Part shown: positions 7,984 to 39,882 of the stretch, piece by piece | How the letters are laid out: each line of letters begins with the position of its first letter | How positions within the stretch are numbered: position 1 is the stretch's first letter | Assembly: GCF_001194135.2 (NCBI RefSeq) | Contig: NC_068999.1 | Coordinates: 22,008,386 to 22,050,187 of the forward strand | Direction of reading: 5' to 3' | DNA length: 41,802 bases | Origin: Octopus bimaculoides | Taxonomy: Eukaryota | Notes under the pieces: model-generated | Database searches by the model: none | The model's input: only the letters and a program-made list of their open reading frames with translations | What the model was told of the DNA's origin: nothing | Translations under genes and position numbers: made by a program

Positions 7984-8647
7984 ACATCCCAGAGTAGATA
8001 TGTGATATCTTACATATTGAATAAATGTTGAGATGATTGAAAAATGTCAGAGAACTGATATTTTAGATTTATTTCTATAAGAGAGGTCTGTCAATTTTAT
8101 TTGTTTTTGCTTTTTTAAAGGTAAATGATGAGTAAATTTGGAATCAAGACAAGAGTTAAAAAATTATTGACAGATTGAATATGTGACAAATTTTATGATC
8201 TGCTTAAAATTTGCCAATCAAATATGAACAATTATAAATTGATGACTTGTGACCTAACAAAAAAATACGATTGTTGATTCTAACAAAAATCCTTTTAATT
8301 ATAGACATCTGTCACAAAATTAAGTGCTTGCATCAAAAGAATGATGGAGCTTCAGAGCTAGCAATAATGTGTCATGGAAAATTGATTTGTGATTTTATTT
8401 TATTTATTTATTTATCTATTATTTTCAGAATTATTGTCTACATTCAAAGTACACATGTTATTCAGAAAAAAAAAAAACAAATCATAAAATTACAGCCAGT
8501 TGCAGAGTTTGAAATGGAGATTAAATCTAGAAGTTTTTAACCACCTATGTTTAGAATTTGAAAATAAGTGCAAAATGAAAAAGATACAATTAGTTACATA
8601 TTCCAAAACAAAGAAAGTAAGAGCTTAACAGCCATAAAAAAAAAAAA

Positions 8648-8835
8648 NNNNNNNNNNNNNNNNNNNNNNNNNNNNNNNNNNNNNNNNNNNNNNNNNNNNN
8701 NNNNNNNNNNNNNNNNNNNNNNNNNNNNNNNNNNNNNNNNNNNNNNNNNNNNNNNNNNNNNNNNNNNNNNNNNNNNNNNNNNNNNNNNNNNNNNNNNNNN
8801 NNNNNNNNNNNNNNNNNNNNNNNNNNNNNNNNNNN
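8648..8835. other. Assembly gap (N run)
   Basis: Run of N. Confidence 1.
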
Positions 8836-9295
8836 GTGGTGGCGGCGGTGGTGGCAGTGCATGCTTATTCTGAAACCCTATAAGGGGAACATTAATTTGG
8901 ATTTAGTGATATTGTGAAGATGTGTGGCTTAGTGGTTTAGGTGTTGCTCAGAAGATCATCATTGTGATTCCTGAACCAGGTGGAAGCATTGTGTTCATAA
9001 GGTGAATAATATAGTACTTGAATGCCCAAGCTTGAGTAAAATATATTGAAGCTGAAAAAACACTTTGTGAGAAGTTATTCAGCTTCAATAAAACTATATG
9101 CAGTGACGAAAAAGCTTTCTGGAATAAATAGAAGGAATAAATAAATGAATGAATGGAAATGTGCTATATTAAGGCACAATGCCTCTCCCAGACACAACAA
9201 AAATTGTTTCAACACATGAATTCACATAAGGAATCTTGCAAACCAGATACAAAAACAAAGTGTGTATATGTGTGTGTGTGTGTGTGTGTACAGTT

Positions 9296-10884: not shown

Positions 10885-11180
10885 GATCATCATCATTATC
10901 ATCGTTTAACATCTACCTTCCATGCTATCATGGGTGGGACGGTTCCACAAGAGATGGCTGGGCAGAAGCCTGTACCAGACTTCTGTGACTGTTTCGGCAG
11001 AATTTTTACAGCTGGATGCCCTTCCTAACAACAATCACTCAGCAGAGTGGACTTAGTGCTTTTTGTGTGGCACAAGCACAGGTGAGGTCAATTCTAAACA
11101 CCAACCACTTTACAGTGTGGACTGGGTGCTTTTAAGTGACACCTGCATTGACAGGGTCACCAAATACTTGCAAGGCTAAA
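10885..11180 (-). mobile_element. RTE LINE 3'UTR with (GAT)n-type tail
   Basis: Reverse complement of the gttaggaagggcatccagc..catggaa..gatgatga module also at 25900-26075. Confidence 0.65.
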
Positions 11181-12059
11181 AAAAAAAAACTTTCAAGAGA
11201 GGAGGGGGACATTGGAGAAGTTGATCTTGTGTCAGATGATGAATGGTTATAGTGAGACAGAGAGACAGAAACAGGTGTCTTACTGTGGAGGAAGTACAAG
11301 GTTACCTGGCTGGAGAGAGAATGAGATCAGGAATGAAGACAGAAACAGGTGTGCTACCACAAAAGAAATACATGGTTACCCAACCTGAGGGAAGTCCAGG
11401 AGAAGGAGAGAGAGAGTGGGAGACAGCAGGATGGAGATGGTGGCAAAATGTTAGGCATACTCACAAGGGATGGGGATCGGAATATAAATGGGATGCTTGA
11501 GTAAAGGAAAAGAGAGATATAGATGGTGGCAAGTGCCAGGGCATACCCTTGAGGTTCGAATGCCATAATATAAGTGGCAGGATATTGCAAAGGAAGTGTG
11601 GTGTGATTAAAGAGTGTCAAGGGGTAAGTGAGTGGTGAAAACTTGGGTATATATAGTCTAGGGGCTACTGAATAGCAATGATACTGAGGAACAGGATTGG
11701 AGAGTGAGAGCTAGGCATAGTGTATGAAGGAGAAAATGTAAGGAAGAGAACAAATGGGGAGATGTAGATTGGTCTGTTGGGGTAGGGTGAGTGAAAAGTT
11801 TTCTTGTTACATGTGGGTTGAGCACACAGGTCAGGTGGGTGGAAGACAGAGTTCAGGGGCTAGCGGAGAGCAATGATACCGTGGCACTAGACCAAGAGGA
11901 CAGGATTGGGGAGTGGGAGGTAAGCATAGTGCACAAAGGGGAAATGTGAGGAAGAGAAGAGATGTAGAGACATAGTTTGGTTTGTTGTGGTAGAGTGTGT
12001 GAGAAATTTTCTTGTTAAGTGTGGGTGGGACACACAATGCTTCTAGAATTCAGTTTCGC

Positions 12060-12325
12060 TGATGTGGGCAGGTCTCTAGAACTTCATATCGCCAGACATC
12101 TCAGTCCAGTACCATTTCCTCTGTGAAGCCCAACATCCTGAAATCGGTCCTTACCACTTCATCCCATGTCTTCTTGGGTCTCCCTCTTCTGTGGGTACCA
12201 TCCACTTTCAGTGATCAGCACTTCTTTATGCAGCTGTCCTCATTCATACACATCACATGTCCAAACCAATGTGGTCTTCTCTCTTGCATGCTACAGTTGA
12301 TTCCTCTTATACCCAACTTTTCTCT
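12060..12325 (-). mobile_element. RTE LINE ORF2 C-terminal fragment
   Basis: Minus strand WFGHVMCMNEDSCIKKC*SLKVDGTHRRGRPKKTWDEVV..GFTEEM. Confidence 0.8.
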
Positions 12326-12489
12326 CAAAAGTAAAATAAACTTTAAGTAAAATAAACTTTCAGTTCAAAGTCAGACATTTCATTCTTAATGACTTGATAT
12401 ATATATATATGGCTATACTTAGGAGATTGTATCACCAAAATGAAACTATTCAGCAATTTCTGCAAAAATTTTACATTACTTTAATATCT

Positions 12490-24312: not shown

Positions 24313-24887
24313 TTAAATGTGAGTAGCCCTGTAACTCCCTTACAACAAGATTCTACTCTGCCCCTGCTCCTTTCTGTCATACCTTAACCCACATCTGCTA
24401 GTATAAAATCCTTCCCCTTAGGTTTTGTAGGCTTGTAAGCTGCATAGCAACCTCATTAGTGCCAATGATATAAGAAAAGCACCCAATACACACTGTAAAG
24501 TGGTTGACGTTAGAAAGGGAATCCAGCTGTAGAAACCATGCCAAAGCAGACTCTAGAACATGATGCAGTCCATTATGGTAGATCTCTGAAAAGAGAGAGA
24601 GAGAGTCTAATGAGGAATGAAACTCTCTGTAGAGCACATAGTTTGAGGGTAAAGGAAGGAATATTGTGAGAAGTGGTTGCCTTAATTTAGAACGATCAGA
24701 GAAGTTTTGGCACTCGGCCACAATAAATGAGATGATGAGATAGGTGGAGTGGAGAAGAAGCAGTGAAGAGACACATGGAGTGGGGAAAAAAAGAATTATG
24801 AAGTTGAAAGCTTCTGCAAAAATTGGTGGAGACCTATTTGGTAAAGGTGCAGAAGATTCAGCAACAATTTGGAAAAAACTATATCTT

Positions 24888-25312: not shown

Positions 25313-25784
25313 ATATTGATTATTTCAATATCATCTTAAATTCTTCTCTGAAAAATCATTCCACTATGAAGGATTTTTTCTTCAGTTTTATAATGCACAG
25401 GTGTGTTTAGCTATTAACAAACCTACCTACTTACTCCTTTCTATTCAGAGTTAAGCAATTATTCACCTTACATCTATTAGTCTTCATAAATTTCTAAAAA
25501 TATGAGCCTAGAAAAGAGCATTAGTACAGCTGCTCACTCTGCTAAAAATAATATCATAATATTCTCCCTGTCACACCTGCAGTCTTATGAAGTGGAAGGA
25601 CATATTGAATAATGTAGTCCTAAATATGTTATACCTGGAAAAAAGGATGTGATCATCTCAGCTAGAATGCTTTTTGATTGTAGGTCTGGTTGATCAGGGC
25701 TAACCTTGGCCATCTCAACAACTTCCTAAAATATAAAAATAATTATCAATGTTTTAGTTTTTATATAGTTGATAACAAGTGATT

Positions 25785-26075
25785 GGTGATATGCTGTGCT
25801 TGAGAAAACTTGTCAAGCCAAGTGAAATTGTAGTCATGGCTGATGCTGGTGCCACATGACTGGTACGTAAAAGCATCTGTGCCGGTTGGCACATTCAAAG
25901 CACCCATTACACTCTTGGAGTGGTTGGTGTTAGGAAGGGCATCCAACCATAGAAACCACGCCAGATCAGACTGGAAGTTAGTGCAGCTCTCTGGCTTGCC
26001 AGTTCCAGTCAAACTGTCCAGCCCATACCAGCATGGAAAGCAGATGCCAAATGATGGTGATGAGGATGATATTAT
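25785..26075 (+). mobile_element. RTE LINE 3' end (ORF2 end plus 3'UTR, GAT tail)
   Basis: gctgtgcttgagaaaac (AVLEK), gttaggaagggcatccaacc, tail atgatggtgatgaggatgat. A related piece lies at about 24455-24575. Confidence 0.7.
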
Positions 26076-26962
26076 CCCAATCAACTGTTTCTTGAATGAT
26101 AAAGGCATAAACCTTGAAGGGAAATAAAATGGACAACTAAAAAAAAGAAAAAAAAAGTTAAATAATATTAATAAGAAAGACCTCTGTTTCCTCTTGATAC
26201 CAATAAAGAAATATAATATGTAAATAAATTATATAGATGTCTAAATGAATGTGATAATTTGCAAGATAAGCCAAGAGCTTATTTGCTGAAGTAACTAAGC
26301 ATTGTAAAGAAACATTATGCCAGAAATATCATATTTCTTTATTTTGAGTGAAAGCTTCCCTTTATTGACAATAAAAAAATATTTTTCCTTCATTTATCAG
26401 ATACTATTGAATGCTTTATCCATATTTATGCTACTGCAACTGTCACCAAAATAAAAAATAGAAAAAACTCAGGAAATTTATACAGTATTGCTTGACCTAT
26501 TAGCAAAGCAACCAAATCTCCGTCATAGACATGCTATCATCTCAAGTAAAAAAAAAAGAACAAATTGAATAATGTAGTCCTTGATAAGCTTGAAAAAGAT
26601 AAAGGATATTCAGTCTCAAGTTTGCTCTATTAAACTGATCAGGGGTTAAATGACAGTAGGAACTGTATTACCATACATGTACTTAGACTTTAGATTTAAT
26701 CAATGTAAAAATATAAATAGATTTAAATAAAAGCGAAAGTGATATAGACTGAAAATAACCATCTCTTTCTTGATCAATGTACAGAAGTTCAAGCTGAATA
26801 TCAACTGCATCAATTGAACCCACAAATTTACGAAGGTCTTCAGAATCAAGAACACAACCTCTCCTTCCTTTGACTAATAAAAAAGAAAAAGATTCCAGTT
26901 TTTTTTTTTTTTTTTTAATTAGCATTATTAACATTACAATGAAAAAGTAACATATAAAAGAA

Positions 26963-27128
26963 CTGAGTTGTGGCTGCATGACTGGGAAGTTTTCTATGCA
27001 ATTCCAGGTTCAACCCTACTGTGTGGTACCTGGGGTAAATATTTTCCATTATCACCTTGATTTGACTAAAACCATGTGAGGGGAATTTGGTAGACAGAAA
27101 AAAGAAAAAGCATGTCATACATATATAT
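26963..27128 (+). mobile_element. SINE family 1, 5' half, ending at its microsatellite where U6 begins
   Basis: Degenerate head and core, gtgagggaatttggtagacagaa, then catacatatatat. Confidence 0.65.
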
Positions 27129-27219
27129 GGCAGTACGTATACTAAAATTGGAACAATACAGAGATTAGCATGGCCCCTTCACAAGGATGACACAAATTCG
27201 TGAAGCATTCTGTACTTTT
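27129..27219 (+). pseudogene. U6 snRNA retropseudogene (about nt 12 to the 3' end)
   Basis: ggcagtacgtatactaaaattggaacaatacagag-attagcatggccccttcacaaggatgacac-aaattcgtgaagcattctgtactttt aligns with the U6 consensus; 3-nt and 2-nt deletions and CpG decay. Confidence 0.93.
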
Positions 27220-27400
27220 ACTCACAGAGGAGATGACCAGGACTGAAACTCCTGGTGGTTTTCTGTGCTTGAAAAGACATGTGAAGCTGAGTAAAAGCAT
27301 GGGTGTTCTTGCATACAGGCCTGTCCCCTGCATCCCTCTCCAGCTGAACTCTGCTAATCTTATGAGCTCATGAGTGCTGGTGCCACATAAAAGGCACCCA
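27220..27400 (+). mobile_element. RTE LINE 3' segment fused to U6
   Basis: LTEEMTR(fs)D*NSWWFSVLEKTCEAE*; 27263-27296 matches 25794-25827 at 27/34; exact 14-mer tgctggtgccacat shared with 25844. Confidence 0.75.
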
Positions 27401-27402
27401 TA

Positions 27403-27850
27403 CAGATGACATGCCACTAAGGATTTCGCCCAGTGTACTAACAATTCTGCCAGCTCACCAATAATAATAATAATAATTTTAGTAATAATAATAATGGTTT
27501 CAGATTTTGGCTCAAGGCCAGCAGGGGGTAAGATGATTGCATCAACCCCAGTGCTCAACTGGTACTTATTTTATCAACCCTGAAAGGATGAAAGGCAAAG
27601 TCAACTGCAGCAGAATTTGAACTCAGAACATAAAGATGGATGAGAAGTAAAGTATAATAATAATAATGATAATGATAATAATGATTTTCAGTACTGAGAC
27701 AAAGCCATAAATCTATTTGGACTTTAGCTCAATACTACTACTTATTTTATCAATTCTAGATAGAAGAACTGTTATATAGATCGGTGGGATTTGAAAATCA
27801 GATGTAGAAGGTTACAGCTAAAAACTATAAGACATTTAGTTTAGTGCTTT
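27403..27850 (-). mobile_element. Stack of SINE family 2 copies separated by (AAT)n tails
   Basis: Head fragment 27403-27457, body 27459-27625, and a further decayed copy at about 27655-27850; homologous to the + strand copy at 34063. Confidence 0.65.
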
Positions 27851-27900
27851 ACTGTTCTTGTCCATTCACTGTTGTAATAATGACAACGACTATGTTTCAG

Positions 27901-28076: not shown

Positions 28077-28223
28077 GTTCGTATGATTTCCTGTTATATA
28101 CTTTAGCACTAAAGCATTTTCTCTTTTTTCTTGTTTTTTCTGCTGTCATGTAACTGGGAGCAGAAGAGTAGGTAGTTTGCCTAAATAGACATAAACACAA
28201 ATAATGAAATATAAATTTCCATT

Positions 28224-28296
28224 CTTCCTGTAGTTCAGTCGATAGCACACTGGACTTCTAATTCAGAGCCTGTGAGTTTGAGTCCCACCAGGGATG
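28224..28296 (+). pseudogene. tRNA-Arg(TCT)-like pseudogene
   Basis: 73-nt cloverleaf remnant: anticodon arm ctgga-CTTCTAA-ttcag, T-loop tttgagt (decayed TTCGAGT), 3' acceptor cagggat-g; mismatches in the acceptor and T stems. Confidence 0.7.
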
Positions 28297-28307
28297 AATA
28301 CCTTATA

Positions 28308-28745
28308 GGACAGGTGTGGCTGTTGGGTAAGGAATTTGCTTCCCAACCACATGGTTATGGGTTCAGTTCCACTGTGTAACACCTAGGGCAGGTTTATTTT
28401 ACTATAGCTTATTATAACTCTTGGCTGACCAAAGTCTTGTGAGTGGATTTGGTAGACAGAATCTGAAAGTCTGTCTGTGTGTGTGTGTGTATATATACAC
28501 CATTTGTGTGTGTCTTTGTGTATATCTTTGCATGTCTTTATGCTTGTGTTTCTCCCCCACTATACAGCTGCTTAACAACAGGTGTTGGTTTGCTTATGTC
28601 CCTGTAACTTAGCAGTTTGGCAAAAAGACTGATAGAATAATACTAGGCTTAAAAAAAGTACTGGAGTTGATTTGTTCAACTAAAACCCTTCAAGGTATTG
28701 TCCCAGCATGGCCACAGTTTAATGGCTGAAACAAGTAAAAGATAA
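28308..28745 (+). mobile_element. SINE family 1, full length
   Basis: Head, core, (TG)n and tail ctgaaacaagtaaaagataag. Confidence 0.85.
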
Positions 28746-29826: not shown

Positions 29827-29860
<34 letters not shown>

Positions 29861-29999
29861 GTGATTTCAAATTTTGGCACTAGGCCAGCAATTTTGGGGG
29901 AGGGGGTAAGTCAATTGCATCAGCCCTTCATATTTGGTCCATTACACTACTTCTTTCACTAAGGCTACTAGACACATAAATACTACCTGTTCTTCCCAG

Positions 30000-31661: not shown

Positions 31662-32049
31662 GTATGATGCAATTATTGTTTCTTACTTGAATTTATTGCT
31701 TCATAACTTTTTAACTGCTTTGATATTGATTTTTCTTGCATTGATATTTTCATCTTATTATACATCTTTCATTAGTTTGCACACATATATATTTTTAGGA
31801 GAATGTTTTCTATAGTTTAATGAATAATAAAAAAGAGATTTATAGATATTCAGCAATCATAAAAATGGACAATCTTGTTGACTTTCTGAAAATTGTCAAT
31901 GACTGCCCAAAGTTGATGTAGTGATTCAAGAAAAGTTTGTATCATTTTCTTGTGGTTTAAAAAATAGAGGCTTGTTCAGATTGGTTTGTAAATAAACTTG
32001 TAGGGGATATATCAGTTGAAATAACTTGTTTACATAAAGCTAAAACAAA

Positions 32050-33128
32050 AATCATGGTCACTAATGGTTTGCAGACGTGTGTGTTATATTTTGCATTTGT
32101 TGCTCCGTTGGTGGCTAATGAGCCCTGCTCTTGACAAGCATACACAACTGCAAACATTGCAAACCAAGCTTTCCCCATTCACTACACCAGCAGTACGCTT
32201 TCAAGCAGCACACTTAAGTTCTTCATGCAGAATACATGCTCTCTCAAAGGTGTCGACCCTCTCCTTAACCTGCTTCCTCCATCTGTGGTAATGACAGGCA
32301 TTGCTCACCCAGTCAGTTTCCTGCATATCACAGGCCTTTAATGAGGACTTGACACAGTCCTTAAATCACAGCCTTGGTTTCTGCAGGAGTCTCTTTCCAT
32401 TAACAAGTTCCCCATATAGCATCTGCTTAGGGATCCTGCTATCCTTCATTCTAATAAGGTGTCCAGTCCAATGTAACCAGTGCTTGTGCACCATTGCCTC
32501 AATACTCAAGATATCAGCTGTTCTCAGAACCTGTGTGTCTGGAGTTTTTAAGGTCCAGCCAACATTCAGAATGCGTCAAGAGTTCCATGTTTGCCAGTCT
32601 GTTCCAGCCCTGGCATTGAAATCGCCCAGTAGAATGACTTTATCAGAATTGGGGATTTTCCTAAGTATGGCTCTCAGCTGGGTATAAAAAATAGTTTTAT
32701 CTTCATCACAACTAGTCAAAGTAGCCTACCTTTCAGGTGCAATCGTAGAGTCATTAGATGTTCATTTAGAGGAAGCTCCTCTAACTTCTTAAGGATGTCA
32801 GATCGAACTGCAAAGCCAACATCAGCCTCTCTGCACTCCTCCTTCTGCCTCCTATTCCAAAAAAAGGTGTATCCACCTCTTACTTCCTGAAGCTCACCAT
32901 CATCTTCTGTACGAGTCCCTGAAACTGCAGCTATATCAATGTTATAGTGGTTCAGTTCGTGAGCAACAAGTGCAGTGCATCTTTCAGACCTACAATCATT
33001 CTTGTTATCCAACAGAGCGTGCATATTCCAACATGAAATGTTCGAGTTTCATCCAGATTTTGTAAATAAAAGTCTCTTTGTTTTTTTGAGTGCAGGGTGG
33101 ACATCTGTCAGTCGTGCTAAACTGACCA
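32050..33128 (-). mobile_element. RTE-clade LINE with the RT domain deleted
   Basis: APE: [45 protein letters not shown], joined at about 32578 to C-terminal RILNVGW..HWTGHLIRM..LYGEL and CNVC..RAGLISHQR. Confidence 0.85.
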
Positions 33129-37300: not shown

Positions 37301-37703
37301 AGGCTGCATGGTAAGTAGCTCGTTTACCAACCACATGGTTCAGGGTTCAGTCCCACTGCATGGCACCTTGGGCAAGTGTCTTCTACTATAGCCTCGGGCC
37401 GACCAAAGCCTTGTGAGTGGATTTGGTAGACGGAAACTGAAAGAAGCTTGTCGTATATATGTATATGTATATATATGTCTGTCTGTGTGTGTGTTTCTGT
37501 GTCTGTGTTTGTCCCCACAACATCGCTTGACAACCGATGCTGGTGTGTTTATGTCCCCATAACTTAGCGGTTCGGCAAAAGAGACTGATAGAATAAGTAC
37601 TAGGCTTACAAAGAATAAGTCCTGGGGTCGATTTGCTCGACTAAAGGCGGTGCTCCAGCATGGCCGCAGTCAAATGACTGAAACAAGTAAAAGAGTAAAA
37701 GAG
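37301..37703 (+). mobile_element. SINE family 1, youngest copy in the window
   Basis: Most CpGs retained (ctcgggccgacc, agacgg, gcggttcggc, gtcgatttgctcgac, ggcgg); tail aagtaaaagagtaaaagag. A decayed 3' half precedes it at about 36985-37215. Confidence 0.92.

Positions 37704-38899: not shown

Positions 38900-39882
<983 letters not shown>

What the first reader, a model, noticed from the sequence alone, without database searches (positions are those of the whole stretch)
27129..27400. U6 snRNA / RTE-LINE chimeric retrocopy, possibly a U6-headed SINE-like family
Seen: U6 from about nt 12 through its 3' U-tract is joined seamlessly to the end of an RTE ORF2 (LTEEMTR..WWFSVLEKTCEAE*) and 3'UTR sequence shared with RTE ends elsewhere in the window (25785-26075; ORF end also at 38900-39420). 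It sits at the microsatellite of a half SINE and is cut by another SINE. Established: U6/L1 chimeras joined at the U6 U-tract are known in mammals (template switching or RNA ligation); as I recall, U6/RTE chimeras were noted in platypus and U1/U2-derived SINEU in crocodilians. Inference: I know of no mollusc example. Many copies sharing this exact junction would mean an amplified U6-derived SINE; varied junctions would mean recurrent chimera formation by RTE machinery.
Basis: partly seen in the sequence, partly recalled or inferred. Interest (0 to 1): 0.8.

Follow-up and report, generated by a model that had tools for sequence, protein, structure and literature searches.

The report
Dead U6 snRNA–RTE chimeric retrocopy
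A decayed copy of the spliceosomal U6 RNA is fused at its natural 3' end to the tail end of an RTE-type jumping gene. This kind of fusion is already known from vertebrates; here it is one dead copy in what looks like an octopus genome, and nothing shows that it multiplied.

Summary
Window 27129-27219 is U6 snRNA nt 12-107 (Rfam 72 bits, E 1.7e-16), about 90% identical to canonical U6. It has a 3-nt deletion in the ACAGAGA box and keeps all five positions of the U-tract. One base later (27221) the last 24 codons of an RTE-type ORF2 begin, running to a TAA stop at 27292-27294. About 110 nt of RTE 3'UTR follow.

The RTE assignment rests on three collinear matches inside the window. It also rests on RTE ORF ends from metagenome contigs, one of which shares the exact 17-mer CTCACAGAGGAGATGAC.

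The best reading is a U6/LINE chimeric retrocopy. Such chimeras were already reported for RTE-like elements in the anole lizard.

Two caveats:
- The RTE's own last ~190 nt and tail are missing. They are replaced, at a 3-nt microhomology, by the last ~58 nt of a different SINE plus (AAT)6.
- No target-site duplication is visible.

The U6-headed SINE family idea could not be tested, because no cephalopod genome was reachable. It is disfavoured: only one copy was found, the U6 head is 5'-truncated, and T4 runs lie inside the unit. Modest interest; a new member of a known kind.

The parts
26952..27128 (+). 5' flank: first half of the ~430-bp tRNA-like 'SINE-A'. Its 5' end is intact and it stops in its internal (TA)n tract. 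Its second half is absent downstream.
   Evidence: 75% identity to the full copy at 37302-37700 and 80% to 28304-28745. The RTE in contig L002 ends with the same ...agacagaaactggaagaagccc..(ta)n sequence.
27129..27219 (+). U6 snRNA nt 12-107. The 5' stem-loop is missing, 3 nt are deleted in the ACAGAGA box, 2 nt are deleted at nt 78-79, CpG sites have decayed, and the 5-position U-tract is kept as CTTTT.
   Evidence: Rfam RF00026 72.2 bits, E 1.7e-16. 82 of 91 aligned bases identical to canonical U6. It is the only U6 match in the window.
27220..27220 (+). A single A between the U-tract and the RTE codons; origin unassigned.
   Evidence: L004 has G at this position (aagCTCACAG) where the window has ttttaCTCACAG.
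27221..27294 (+). Last 24 codons plus stop of an RTE-type ORF2 (LTEEMTR..WWFSVLEKTCEAE*), with a 1-nt deletion near 27250.
   Evidence: BLASTP to P0002, E 4e-5. Exact 17-mer with L004 598-614. Matches 25784-25827 and 12160-12074 on the - strand.
27295..27404 (+). Partial RTE 3'UTR ending in the module gctggtgccacataaaaggcacccataca. The ~190-nt RTE terminus and (GAT)n tail are missing.
   Evidence: 27363-27397 matches 11090-11056 on the - strand at 80%. 27379-27404 matches L001 1232-1257. The RTE terminus occurs only at 10886-11084 (- strand), 24476-24552 and 25780-26080, never downstream.
27402..27459 (+). Last ~58 nt of 'SINE-B', overlapping the RTE piece by the 3-nt microhomology ACA.
   Evidence: Local alignment to the full SINE-B copy at 34265->34040 (- strand), score 48 against shuffles of 18.4 +/- 3.0, z 9.9.
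27460..27477 (+). (AAT)6 tail. It is followed by TTTTAGT(AAT)4 and two more SINE-B copies (27490-27650 plus tail, and 27697-27890).
   Evidence: Sequence; SINE-B matches.
10886..12330 (-). Comparator: a 5'-truncated RTE copy with ORF end (GRPKKTWDEVV..GFTEEMVLD*DVWRYEVLETCPHQRN*), a ~1.15-kb modular 3'UTR and a (GAT)n tail.
25784..26075 (+). Comparator: an RTE copy truncated to the last ~45 nt of the ORF plus a short 3'UTR and tail.

Best explanation
This is a dead chimeric retrocopy.

1. A mature U6 snRNA, ending in its 5-U tract, became joined head-to-tail to the 5' end of a broken RTE transcript. That transcript carried the last 74 nt of ORF2 plus 3'UTR. The join arose either by RNA ligation (RtcB-type, U6 2',3'-cyclic phosphate to a 5'-OH) or by a reverse transcriptase jumping from the 5' end of the RTE template onto the 3' end of U6.
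2. The cDNA was integrated by target-primed reverse transcription. Copying stopped at U6 nt 12, and the cDNA end was joined next to the (TA)n tract of an older SINE.
3. The copy has since decayed: about 10% substitutions, loss of CpGs, and a deletion in the ACAGAGA box. It has no function.

Shown: the anatomy and the position of the junction. Inferred: the mechanism.

The 3' side is unresolved. The RTE terminus is replaced by a SINE-B 3' end plus (AAT)6. One reading is that a 5'-truncated SINE-B inserted later, with a target deletion that removed the RTE terminus. The other is that the cDNA was primed on SINE-B RNA and switched templates twice. I rate these two about equally likely.
For: - U6 homology is gap-free up to and including all five U-tract positions, and RTE codons start one base later.
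- Both parts are on the + strand.
- There are no U6 nt 1-11, no promoter region and no U6 3' gene flank; a SINE lies upstream instead.
- The RTE identity has independent support from the window copies at 25784 and at 12330 (- strand), and from contigs L001, L004 and L005.
- This architecture, including 5'-truncated U6, is what is described for U6/L1, U6/L2 and U6/RTE chimeras (PMC4476161).
- Mature U6 ends in a 5-U tract with a cyclic phosphate that RtcB ligates to 5'-OH RNAs (PMC6789731).
Against: - No target-site duplication was found. The only repeat is a 6-nt CATACA lying inside the elements.
- The RTE 3' terminus, which a stringent RTE enzyme should need to start copying, is absent.
- Only one copy is available, so the junction cannot be compared across copies, and no empty site is available.
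- Assignment to the RTE clade rests on the C-terminal motif and the tail type, not on an RT phylogeny. Pfam gave nothing for the C-terminal fragments.
Confidence: 0.8

Rival explanations
1. Multi-template chimera made by a non-RTE enzyme. The cDNA was primed on SINE-B RNA at an (AAT)n target. It jumped after ~58 nt to an RTE transcript at the microhomology ACA, then jumped at the RTE fragment's 5' end onto U6. A further jump onto SINE-A RNA at its (TA)n tract is possible. On this reading RTE and U6 are both passengers. The enzyme would be SINE-B's partner LINE; the (TAA)n-type tails suggest a Dong/R4-like element, which is my own knowledge and was not tested.
For: - The RTE terminus is absent anywhere downstream.
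- There is a 3-nt overlap at the RTE/SINE-B junction.
- All four pieces have the same orientation.
- SINE-B copies sit head-to-tail in (AAT)n at this locus.
- Dong-R4 is abundant and recently active in O. vulgaris (PMC13282606).
Against: - The locus is a SINE-B insertion hotspot, so an independent truncated SINE-B insertion with a deletion is equally easy to imagine.
- The SINE-A half is more diverged (75%) than U6 (90%), which suggests it is older and not part of the same event. The SINE-A reference may be a different subfamily, so this is weak.
- No TSD brackets the composite.
Confidence: 0.4
2. One copy of an amplified U6-headed, RTE-bodied SINE-like family. It might correspond to the single 'SINE/U' family auto-annotated in Octopus vulgaris.
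For: - snRNA-headed SINEs without internal promoters do exist, namely SINEU (PMC4494074).
- RTE fragments do form SINE bodies, including in cephalopods (PMC5786205).
- The O. vulgaris annotation lists one SINE/U family covering 369,490 bp and one SINE/U-L1 family covering 52,753 bp, without naming the snRNA.
Against: - Only one U6 match was found in the window and the five ENA contigs L001-L005.
- Nothing turned up for the junction-spanning antisense ORF in 5.8 billion and 1.84 billion protein sets. Nothing turned up for the junction in JGI metagenome or viral contigs. No cephalopod RTE was found in those two DNA collections either, so these are weak negatives.
- The T4 runs CTTTTA at the junction and GTTTTC at 27258-27263 would stop Pol III.
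- The head lacks nt 1-11.
- The LINE 3' terminus needed for mobilisation is missing.
Confidence: 0.08
3. U6 and the RTE piece arrived independently: an in-situ U6 gene or pseudogene next to which an RTE copy landed. Alternatively, the adjacency is an assembly artefact or a chance resemblance.
For: - No TSD ties the two parts together.
- The U6 3' end (GTGAAGCRTTC) happens to resemble RTE coding sequence (GTGAAGCACGACCTTC) about 30 nt upstream of the junction codon.
Against: - U6 fits 27200-27219 without gaps (16/20), whereas RTE needs two gaps.
- The U6 E-value is 1.7e-16.
- The junction falls exactly at the RNA's mature 3' end, not at a random point.
- The orientation is the same.
- U6 lacks its first 11 nt and any gene flanks.
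- The only N run in the window is about 18 kb away.
Confidence: 0.05

Closest known systems
U6/RTE-like chimeric pseudogenes of Anolis carolinensis (U6 + RTEX-2_Acar), and TSD-less U6/RTE_Mdo and U6/RTESINE1 candidates in opossum (Doucet et al. 2015, PMC4476161)
   Same: U6 is fused at its 3' end to a 5'-truncated RTE-clade element in the same orientation. In the opossum cases U6 is 5'-truncated and no TSD is seen, as here.
   Different: The host appears to be a cephalopod mollusc. The RTE 3' terminus is missing and is replaced by the end of another SINE. Only one decayed copy is known.
U6/L2 and U6/Mon-1 chimeras of platypus (PMC4476161)
   Same: Almost all have a 5'-truncated U6 upstream of a short LINE 3' piece from a 'stringent' LINE with a microsatellite tail. 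TSDs are tiny or absent.
   Different: The LINE clade differs (L2 versus RTE). The platypus chimeras keep the LINE 3' end.
Human U6/L1 chimeric pseudogenes (RtcB ligation model, PMC6789731; template-switch model, PMC4476161 and PMC11838501)
   Same: The junction lies at the U6 5-U tract, the orientation is sense, and the LINE is variably 5'-truncated.
   Different: In L1 chimeras U6 is usually full length, there is a poly(A) tail, and clear TSDs at the L1 endonuclease motif are present. None of these is seen here.
SINEU (U1/U2-headed SINEs of crocodilians, PMC4494074) and SINEs with RTE-derived bodies (PMC5786205)
   Same: An snRNA-derived 5' part is followed by LINE-derived sequence, and internal oligo-T is present.
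   Different: Those are families with many copies that share one junction and carry a functional LINE 3' tail. Here there is a single copy, the head is U6, the RTE part is ORF end plus 3'UTR rather than 5'UTR, and the tail belongs to another element.

Membership tests
U6/LINE chimeric retrocopy | U6 sequence runs to its natural 3' U-tract and is joined directly to LINE sequence | tested here: met
   U6 nt 12-107 occupies 27129-27219, including all five U positions. RTE codons start at 27221.
U6/LINE chimeric retrocopy | U6 and LINE are in the same orientation, and the LINE is 5'-truncated | tested here: met
   Both are on the + strand. The RTE piece starts 74 nt before its stop codon.
U6/LINE chimeric retrocopy | No U6 promoter or gene flanks, so it derives from RNA rather than from the gene | tested here: met
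   Upstream lies a SINE-A half and (TA)n. U6 nt 1-11 are absent, and RTE sequence follows directly downstream.
U6/LINE chimeric retrocopy | The LINE part extends to the LINE's own 3' end and tail | tested here: not met
   RTE homology stops at 27404, about 190 nt short of the terminus seen in L001, at 25897-26075 and at 11040-10886. It is followed by a SINE-B end plus (AAT)6.
U6/LINE chimeric retrocopy | Target-site duplication around the whole chimera | tested here: inconclusive
   No direct repeat of 7 nt or more was found between the 5' flanks and any candidate 3' end. The flanks are microsatellites, and RTE/L2-type insertions often lack a TSD (PMC4476161).
snRNA-headed SINE family (SINEU-like) | Many genomic copies sharing the same head/body junction | not testable with these tools
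   No cephalopod genome is in the searchable collections. One copy was found in the window plus five ENA contigs. Junction searches gave 0 hits.
snRNA-headed SINE family (SINEU-like) | 3' tail derived from, and recognised by, the partner LINE | tested here: not met
   The RTE terminus is missing, and the tail is that of SINE-B.
RTE clade of non-LTR retrotransposons (for the LINE piece) | ORF2 C-terminus and 3' end homologous to RTE elements, with a short microsatellite tail | tested here: met
   - The C-terminal motif is shared with P0002 and P0097 and with the window copies.
- Relatives of P0002 carry RVT_1.
- (GAT)n tails are present in L001, L004, L005 and the window copies.

RTE clade of non-LTR retrotransposons (for the LINE piece) | RT-domain phylogeny places the element in RTE; single ORF with APE + RT | not tested
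   Only the last 24 codons are present here. The comparators are 5'-truncated, and Pfam found no domain in the C-terminal fragments. The clade name rests on motif recognition, which is my own knowledge.

The most novel reading that the evidence does not exclude
The unit is one member of an amplified U6-headed, RTE-bodied SINE-like family in octopus. It might be the unexplained 'SINE/U' family (369 kb) of the O. vulgaris annotation. That would be the first U6-derived SINE and the first snRNA-headed SINE in an invertebrate.

A second, more likely reading is less striking: a three- or four-template chimera (SINE-B / RTE / U6 / possibly SINE-A) that records serial template jumps by a non-RTE reverse transcriptase. 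I put its probability at about 0.4 and its interest at about 0.4.
Probability: 0.08. Interest if true: 0.65.

Novelty: new member of a known kind. Interest (0 to 1): 0.3.

Why it matters
U6/LINE chimeras have been used as markers of which LINE enzymes can switch templates or use ligated RNAs. So far they have been documented in vertebrates, for L1, L2 and RTE. A mollusc example would extend the phenomenon to protostomes. It would also suggest that joining of the U6 3' end to LINE RNA is ancient.

Octopus genomes are rich in RTE, Dong-R4 and SINEs with claimed brain activity, so knowing which enzymes make chimeras is of some use there. A single decayed copy adds little by itself. Its value would come from a genome-wide census of such junctions.

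Tried and rejected
1. Homology search with the 85-aa antisense ORF spanning the junction: one candidate, no hit.
2. HMMER search of the same ORF against 1.84 billion representatives: three hits, all repetitive and unrelated proteins.
3. Exact-pattern scans for the U6|RTE junction and for the RTE ORF end in JGI metagenome contigs: 0 hits each.
4. Scans of viral contigs for the RTE tail and for the junction: 0 hits each. These two collections (JGI metagenome contigs and viral contigs) appear to hold no cephalopod DNA.
5. A pseudo-protein made from the decayed RTE at 38950-39600 found only two ENA proteins. Re-searching with one of them, P0002, gave 950 RT-linked relatives. Only P0001, P0002, P0003 and P0097 (plus the partial P0019 and P0084) are close to the window's RTE. 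Their contigs L001-L005 served as RTE comparators but contain no U6.
6. The idea that 27405-27459 is the true tail of an RTE subfamily, rather than SINE-B, was rejected for now. Similarity to the L001 and L002 3'UTRs is at shuffle level (z 1.2 and 2.6), against z 9.9 to SINE-B.
7. The idea that 27200-27220 is RTE coding sequence (GTGAAGCA..TTC resemblance) was rejected, because U6 fits without gaps.
8. A marginal second 'U6' hit at 32570-32592 (E 0.14) is a chance match inside another LINE.
9. Pfam on the RTE C-terminal fragments found no domains.
10. TSD search found nothing of 7 nt or more.
11. A literature search on Dong/(TAA)n returned nothing useful, so that point rests on my own knowledge.

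Full report
**What is there.** Rfam's U6 model hits the window once, at 27117-27219 on the + strand, at 72.2 bits against a gathering score of 44 (E 1.7e-16). Aligned to canonical metazoan U6, real homology starts at 27129, which is U6 nt 12 (GGCAG...). It runs without interruption to nt 107, with 82 matches, 9 mismatches and two deletions.
- One deletion removes 3 nt of the ACAGAGA box.
- Several differences lie at CpG sites.
- All five positions of the terminal U-tract are present, as CTTTT.
- The first 11 nt of U6, the 5' stem-loop, are absent.

The copy cannot be functional. It is roughly 10% diverged from its source.

**The junction.** One base after the U-tract (27220, an A of unassigned origin), RTE coding sequence begins at 27221. 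It reads LTEEMTRTETP, then after a 1-nt frameshift WWFSVLEKTCEAE*, with TAA at 27292-27294. This is the C-terminus of an RTE-type ORF2, on four lines of evidence:
- The peptide aligns to residues 185-206 of P0002 (LKLTEEMTGDRAEWRSAVLERT, 12/22 identical, E 4e-5). P0002 is an ORF from an ENA metagenome contig. Its 950 relatives include proteins with the RVT_1 reverse-transcriptase domain.
- Contig L004, which encodes P0002, contains aagCTCACAGAGGAGATGAC, an exact 17-mer match to 27221-27237.
- Inside the window, 27253-27296 matches the ORF end and stop at 25784-25827 (77%, z 10). 27222-27246 matches the ORF end of a 5'-truncated RTE on the - strand at 12160-12074 (z 5). The UTR module 27363-27397 matches 11090-11056 of that same copy (80%, z 7.7).
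- Contig L001 carries a cleaner, cephalopod-type RTE 3' end. It has the ORF end GLTMEMTRDRDLWKYAVREKTRQD* and a long modular 3'UTR. Its last module, ggtggcacataaaatcacccactacac, matches 27379-27404.

The three matches are collinear, so the RTE piece is real. It spans 27221-27404.

**What is missing.** In L001 and in the window copies (25897-26075; 11040-10886 on the - strand), that last module is followed by about 190 nt...ctcggagtggttggcgttaggaagggcatcc..., ending in (GAT)n. This terminus is absent here and is not found anywhere downstream in the window. Instead, 27402-27459 aligns to the last ~58 nt of a different SINE, which I call 'SINE-B'. A full copy lies on the - strand at 34265->34040. 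The alignment scores 48 against 18.4 +/- 3.0 for shuffles (z 9.9).

(AAT)6 follows at 27460-27477, and then two more SINE-B copies lie head-to-tail in (AAT)n. The RTE and SINE-B homologies overlap by ACA (27402-27404). I also tested whether 27405-27459 might be the genuine tail of another RTE subfamily. Similarity to the L001 and L002 3'UTRs is at shuffle level (z 1.2 and 2.6), so SINE-B is the supported identity.

**The 5' side.** 26952-27128 is the first half of a ~430-bp tRNA-like SINE, 'SINE-A', with full copies at 37302-37700 and 28304-28745. Its 5' end is intact and it ends in its internal (TA)n tract. The second half is not downstream. The RTE in contig L002 ends with the same sequence as this first half (...agacagaaactggaagaagcccgccatatatat...). 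The 'half SINE' may therefore be a complete, shorter RTE-tailed SINE rather than a broken one.

It is only 75% identical to the young copy, against 90% for U6. This hints that it is older than the U6 insertion, although the reference may be a different subfamily. No target-site duplication of 7 nt or more links the 5' flanks to any candidate 3' end.

**Interpretation.** The junction lies exactly at the mature 3' end of U6. Orientation is shared, and there are no U6 gene flanks. This is the signature of U6/LINE chimeric retrocopies. Doucet et al. 2015 describe these for L1, L2 and RTE-like elements:
- three U6/RTEX-2 chimeras in Anolis;
- two TSD-less, 5'-truncated U6/RTE candidates in opossum;
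- U6/L2 and U6/Mon-1 chimeras in platypus that are almost all 5'-truncated, with tiny or no TSDs (PMC4476161).

Moldovan et al. 2019 show that mature U6 ends in a 5-U tract with a 2',3'-cyclic phosphate that RtcB ligates to 5'-OH RNA (PMC6789731). Template switching is the alternative mechanism. The five retained U positions fit either one.

I considered whether 27200-27220 could be RTE coding sequence, since RTE has GTGAAGCACGACCTTC about 30 nt upstream of the junction codon. U6 fits without gaps and RTE needs two, so the resemblance is coincidental.

**The 3' side has two readings that I cannot separate.**
- (a) A normal U6/RTE chimera with a full RTE terminus was later hit by a 5'-truncated SINE-B insertion. 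The 5' end of that insertion was joined by microhomology, with deletion of the RTE terminus and perhaps of the second half of SINE-A.
- (b) A single cDNA was primed on SINE-B RNA at an (AAT)n site and switched templates to RTE RNA and then to U6. In that case the enzyme was SINE-B's partner, not RTE. The (TAA)n-type tails and head-to-tail arrays suggest a Dong/R4-like element. That rests on my own knowledge and was not tested; Dong-R4 is abundant in O. vulgaris.

Reading (b) explains the missing RTE terminus without an extra event. Reading (a) fits a locus that is plainly a SINE-B hotspot.

**The SINE-family idea.** I could not test it properly. The DNA collections I could scan by pattern (JGI metagenome and viral contigs) hold no cephalopod DNA; the RTE patterns themselves gave 0 hits there. 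The junction pattern gave 0 hits. The antisense ORF spanning the junction found nothing meaningful in two very large protein sets. There is one U6 in the window and none in the five ENA contigs.

Structure argues against a Pol III-driven SINE. The head lacks nt 1-11, metazoan U6 promoters are external, T4 runs sit at the junction and at 27258-27263, and the LINE terminus needed for mobilisation is gone. SINEU shows that promoter-less snRNA heads can still amplify (PMC4494074). The 2026 O. vulgaris annotation lists one 'SINE/U' family of 369 kb whose snRNA is not named (PMC13282606). A family therefore remains possible at low probability.

**Host.** I did not verify the species. The repeats match what I recall of octopus SINE and RTE sequences. 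Literature searches found no report of U6 chimeras or U6 pseudogenes in molluscs.

**Verdict.** The SINE-family extension is unsupported. This is a new member of a known kind, possibly the first mollusc example. It is single and decayed, and of modest interest.

Noticed in passing
L002 1180-1269 versus window 27085-27128 and 37430-37470: An RTE-type element in an ENA metagenome contig ends with the same sequence as the first half of SINE-A (...agacagaaactggaagaagccc..(ta)n, then (cat)n). The first half of the ~430-bp SINE therefore carries an RTE 3' tail. The long SINE may be a composite of a shorter RTE-mobilised SINE plus a second module.
   Followed up: partly
window 28223-28297 (+): A tRNA-Arg(TCT)-like sequence (Rfam tRNA 41 bits; ARAGORN) lies 6 nt upstream of a full SINE-A copy (28304-28745). 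It has several non-canonical pairs, so it is probably a pseudogene or a SINE-related head rather than a working gene.
   Followed up: no
window 27460-27890 and 29827-29926: SINE-B copies sit head-to-tail inside (AAT)n tracts (27490-27650, 27697-27890, 29853-29926). This suggests microsatellite-targeted insertion by their partner LINE.
   Followed up: partly
window 10886-12330 (-): A 5'-truncated RTE copy has an unusually long (~1.15 kb) 3'UTR built of repeated modules. L001 shows the same modular UTR with tandem 'ggcacctgtgtcggtggcacataaaaaacaccatccgagcgtggcc' units.
   Followed up: partly
window 31900-33100 (-): An internally deleted LINE of another type has an endonuclease N-terminus ([38 protein letters not shown]...) joined to a C-terminal part ending in a Cys/His motif (CNVCSCVCLSRAGLISHQRS). 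Pfam gave no hit on the N-terminal ORF.
   Followed up: no
window 27200-27220 versus L001 690-720: The U6 3' end (GTGAAGCGTTCCATATTTTT) resembles RTE ORF sequence (GTGAAGCACGACCTTCAGACGTTAGGT) just upstream of the junction codon. I judged this coincidental, but it could in principle favour pairing between U6 and RTE RNA or cDNA.
   Followed up: partly
window 27110-27118 and 27406-27414: A 9-nt inverted repeat, GCATGTCAT / ATGACATGC, brackets the U6-RTE unit. It is at chance level for the window (blastn-short E about 6).
   Followed up: partly
window ~8640-8840: A run of N (an assembly gap) shows the window comes from a scaffolded assembly. It is far from the finding.
   Followed up: no
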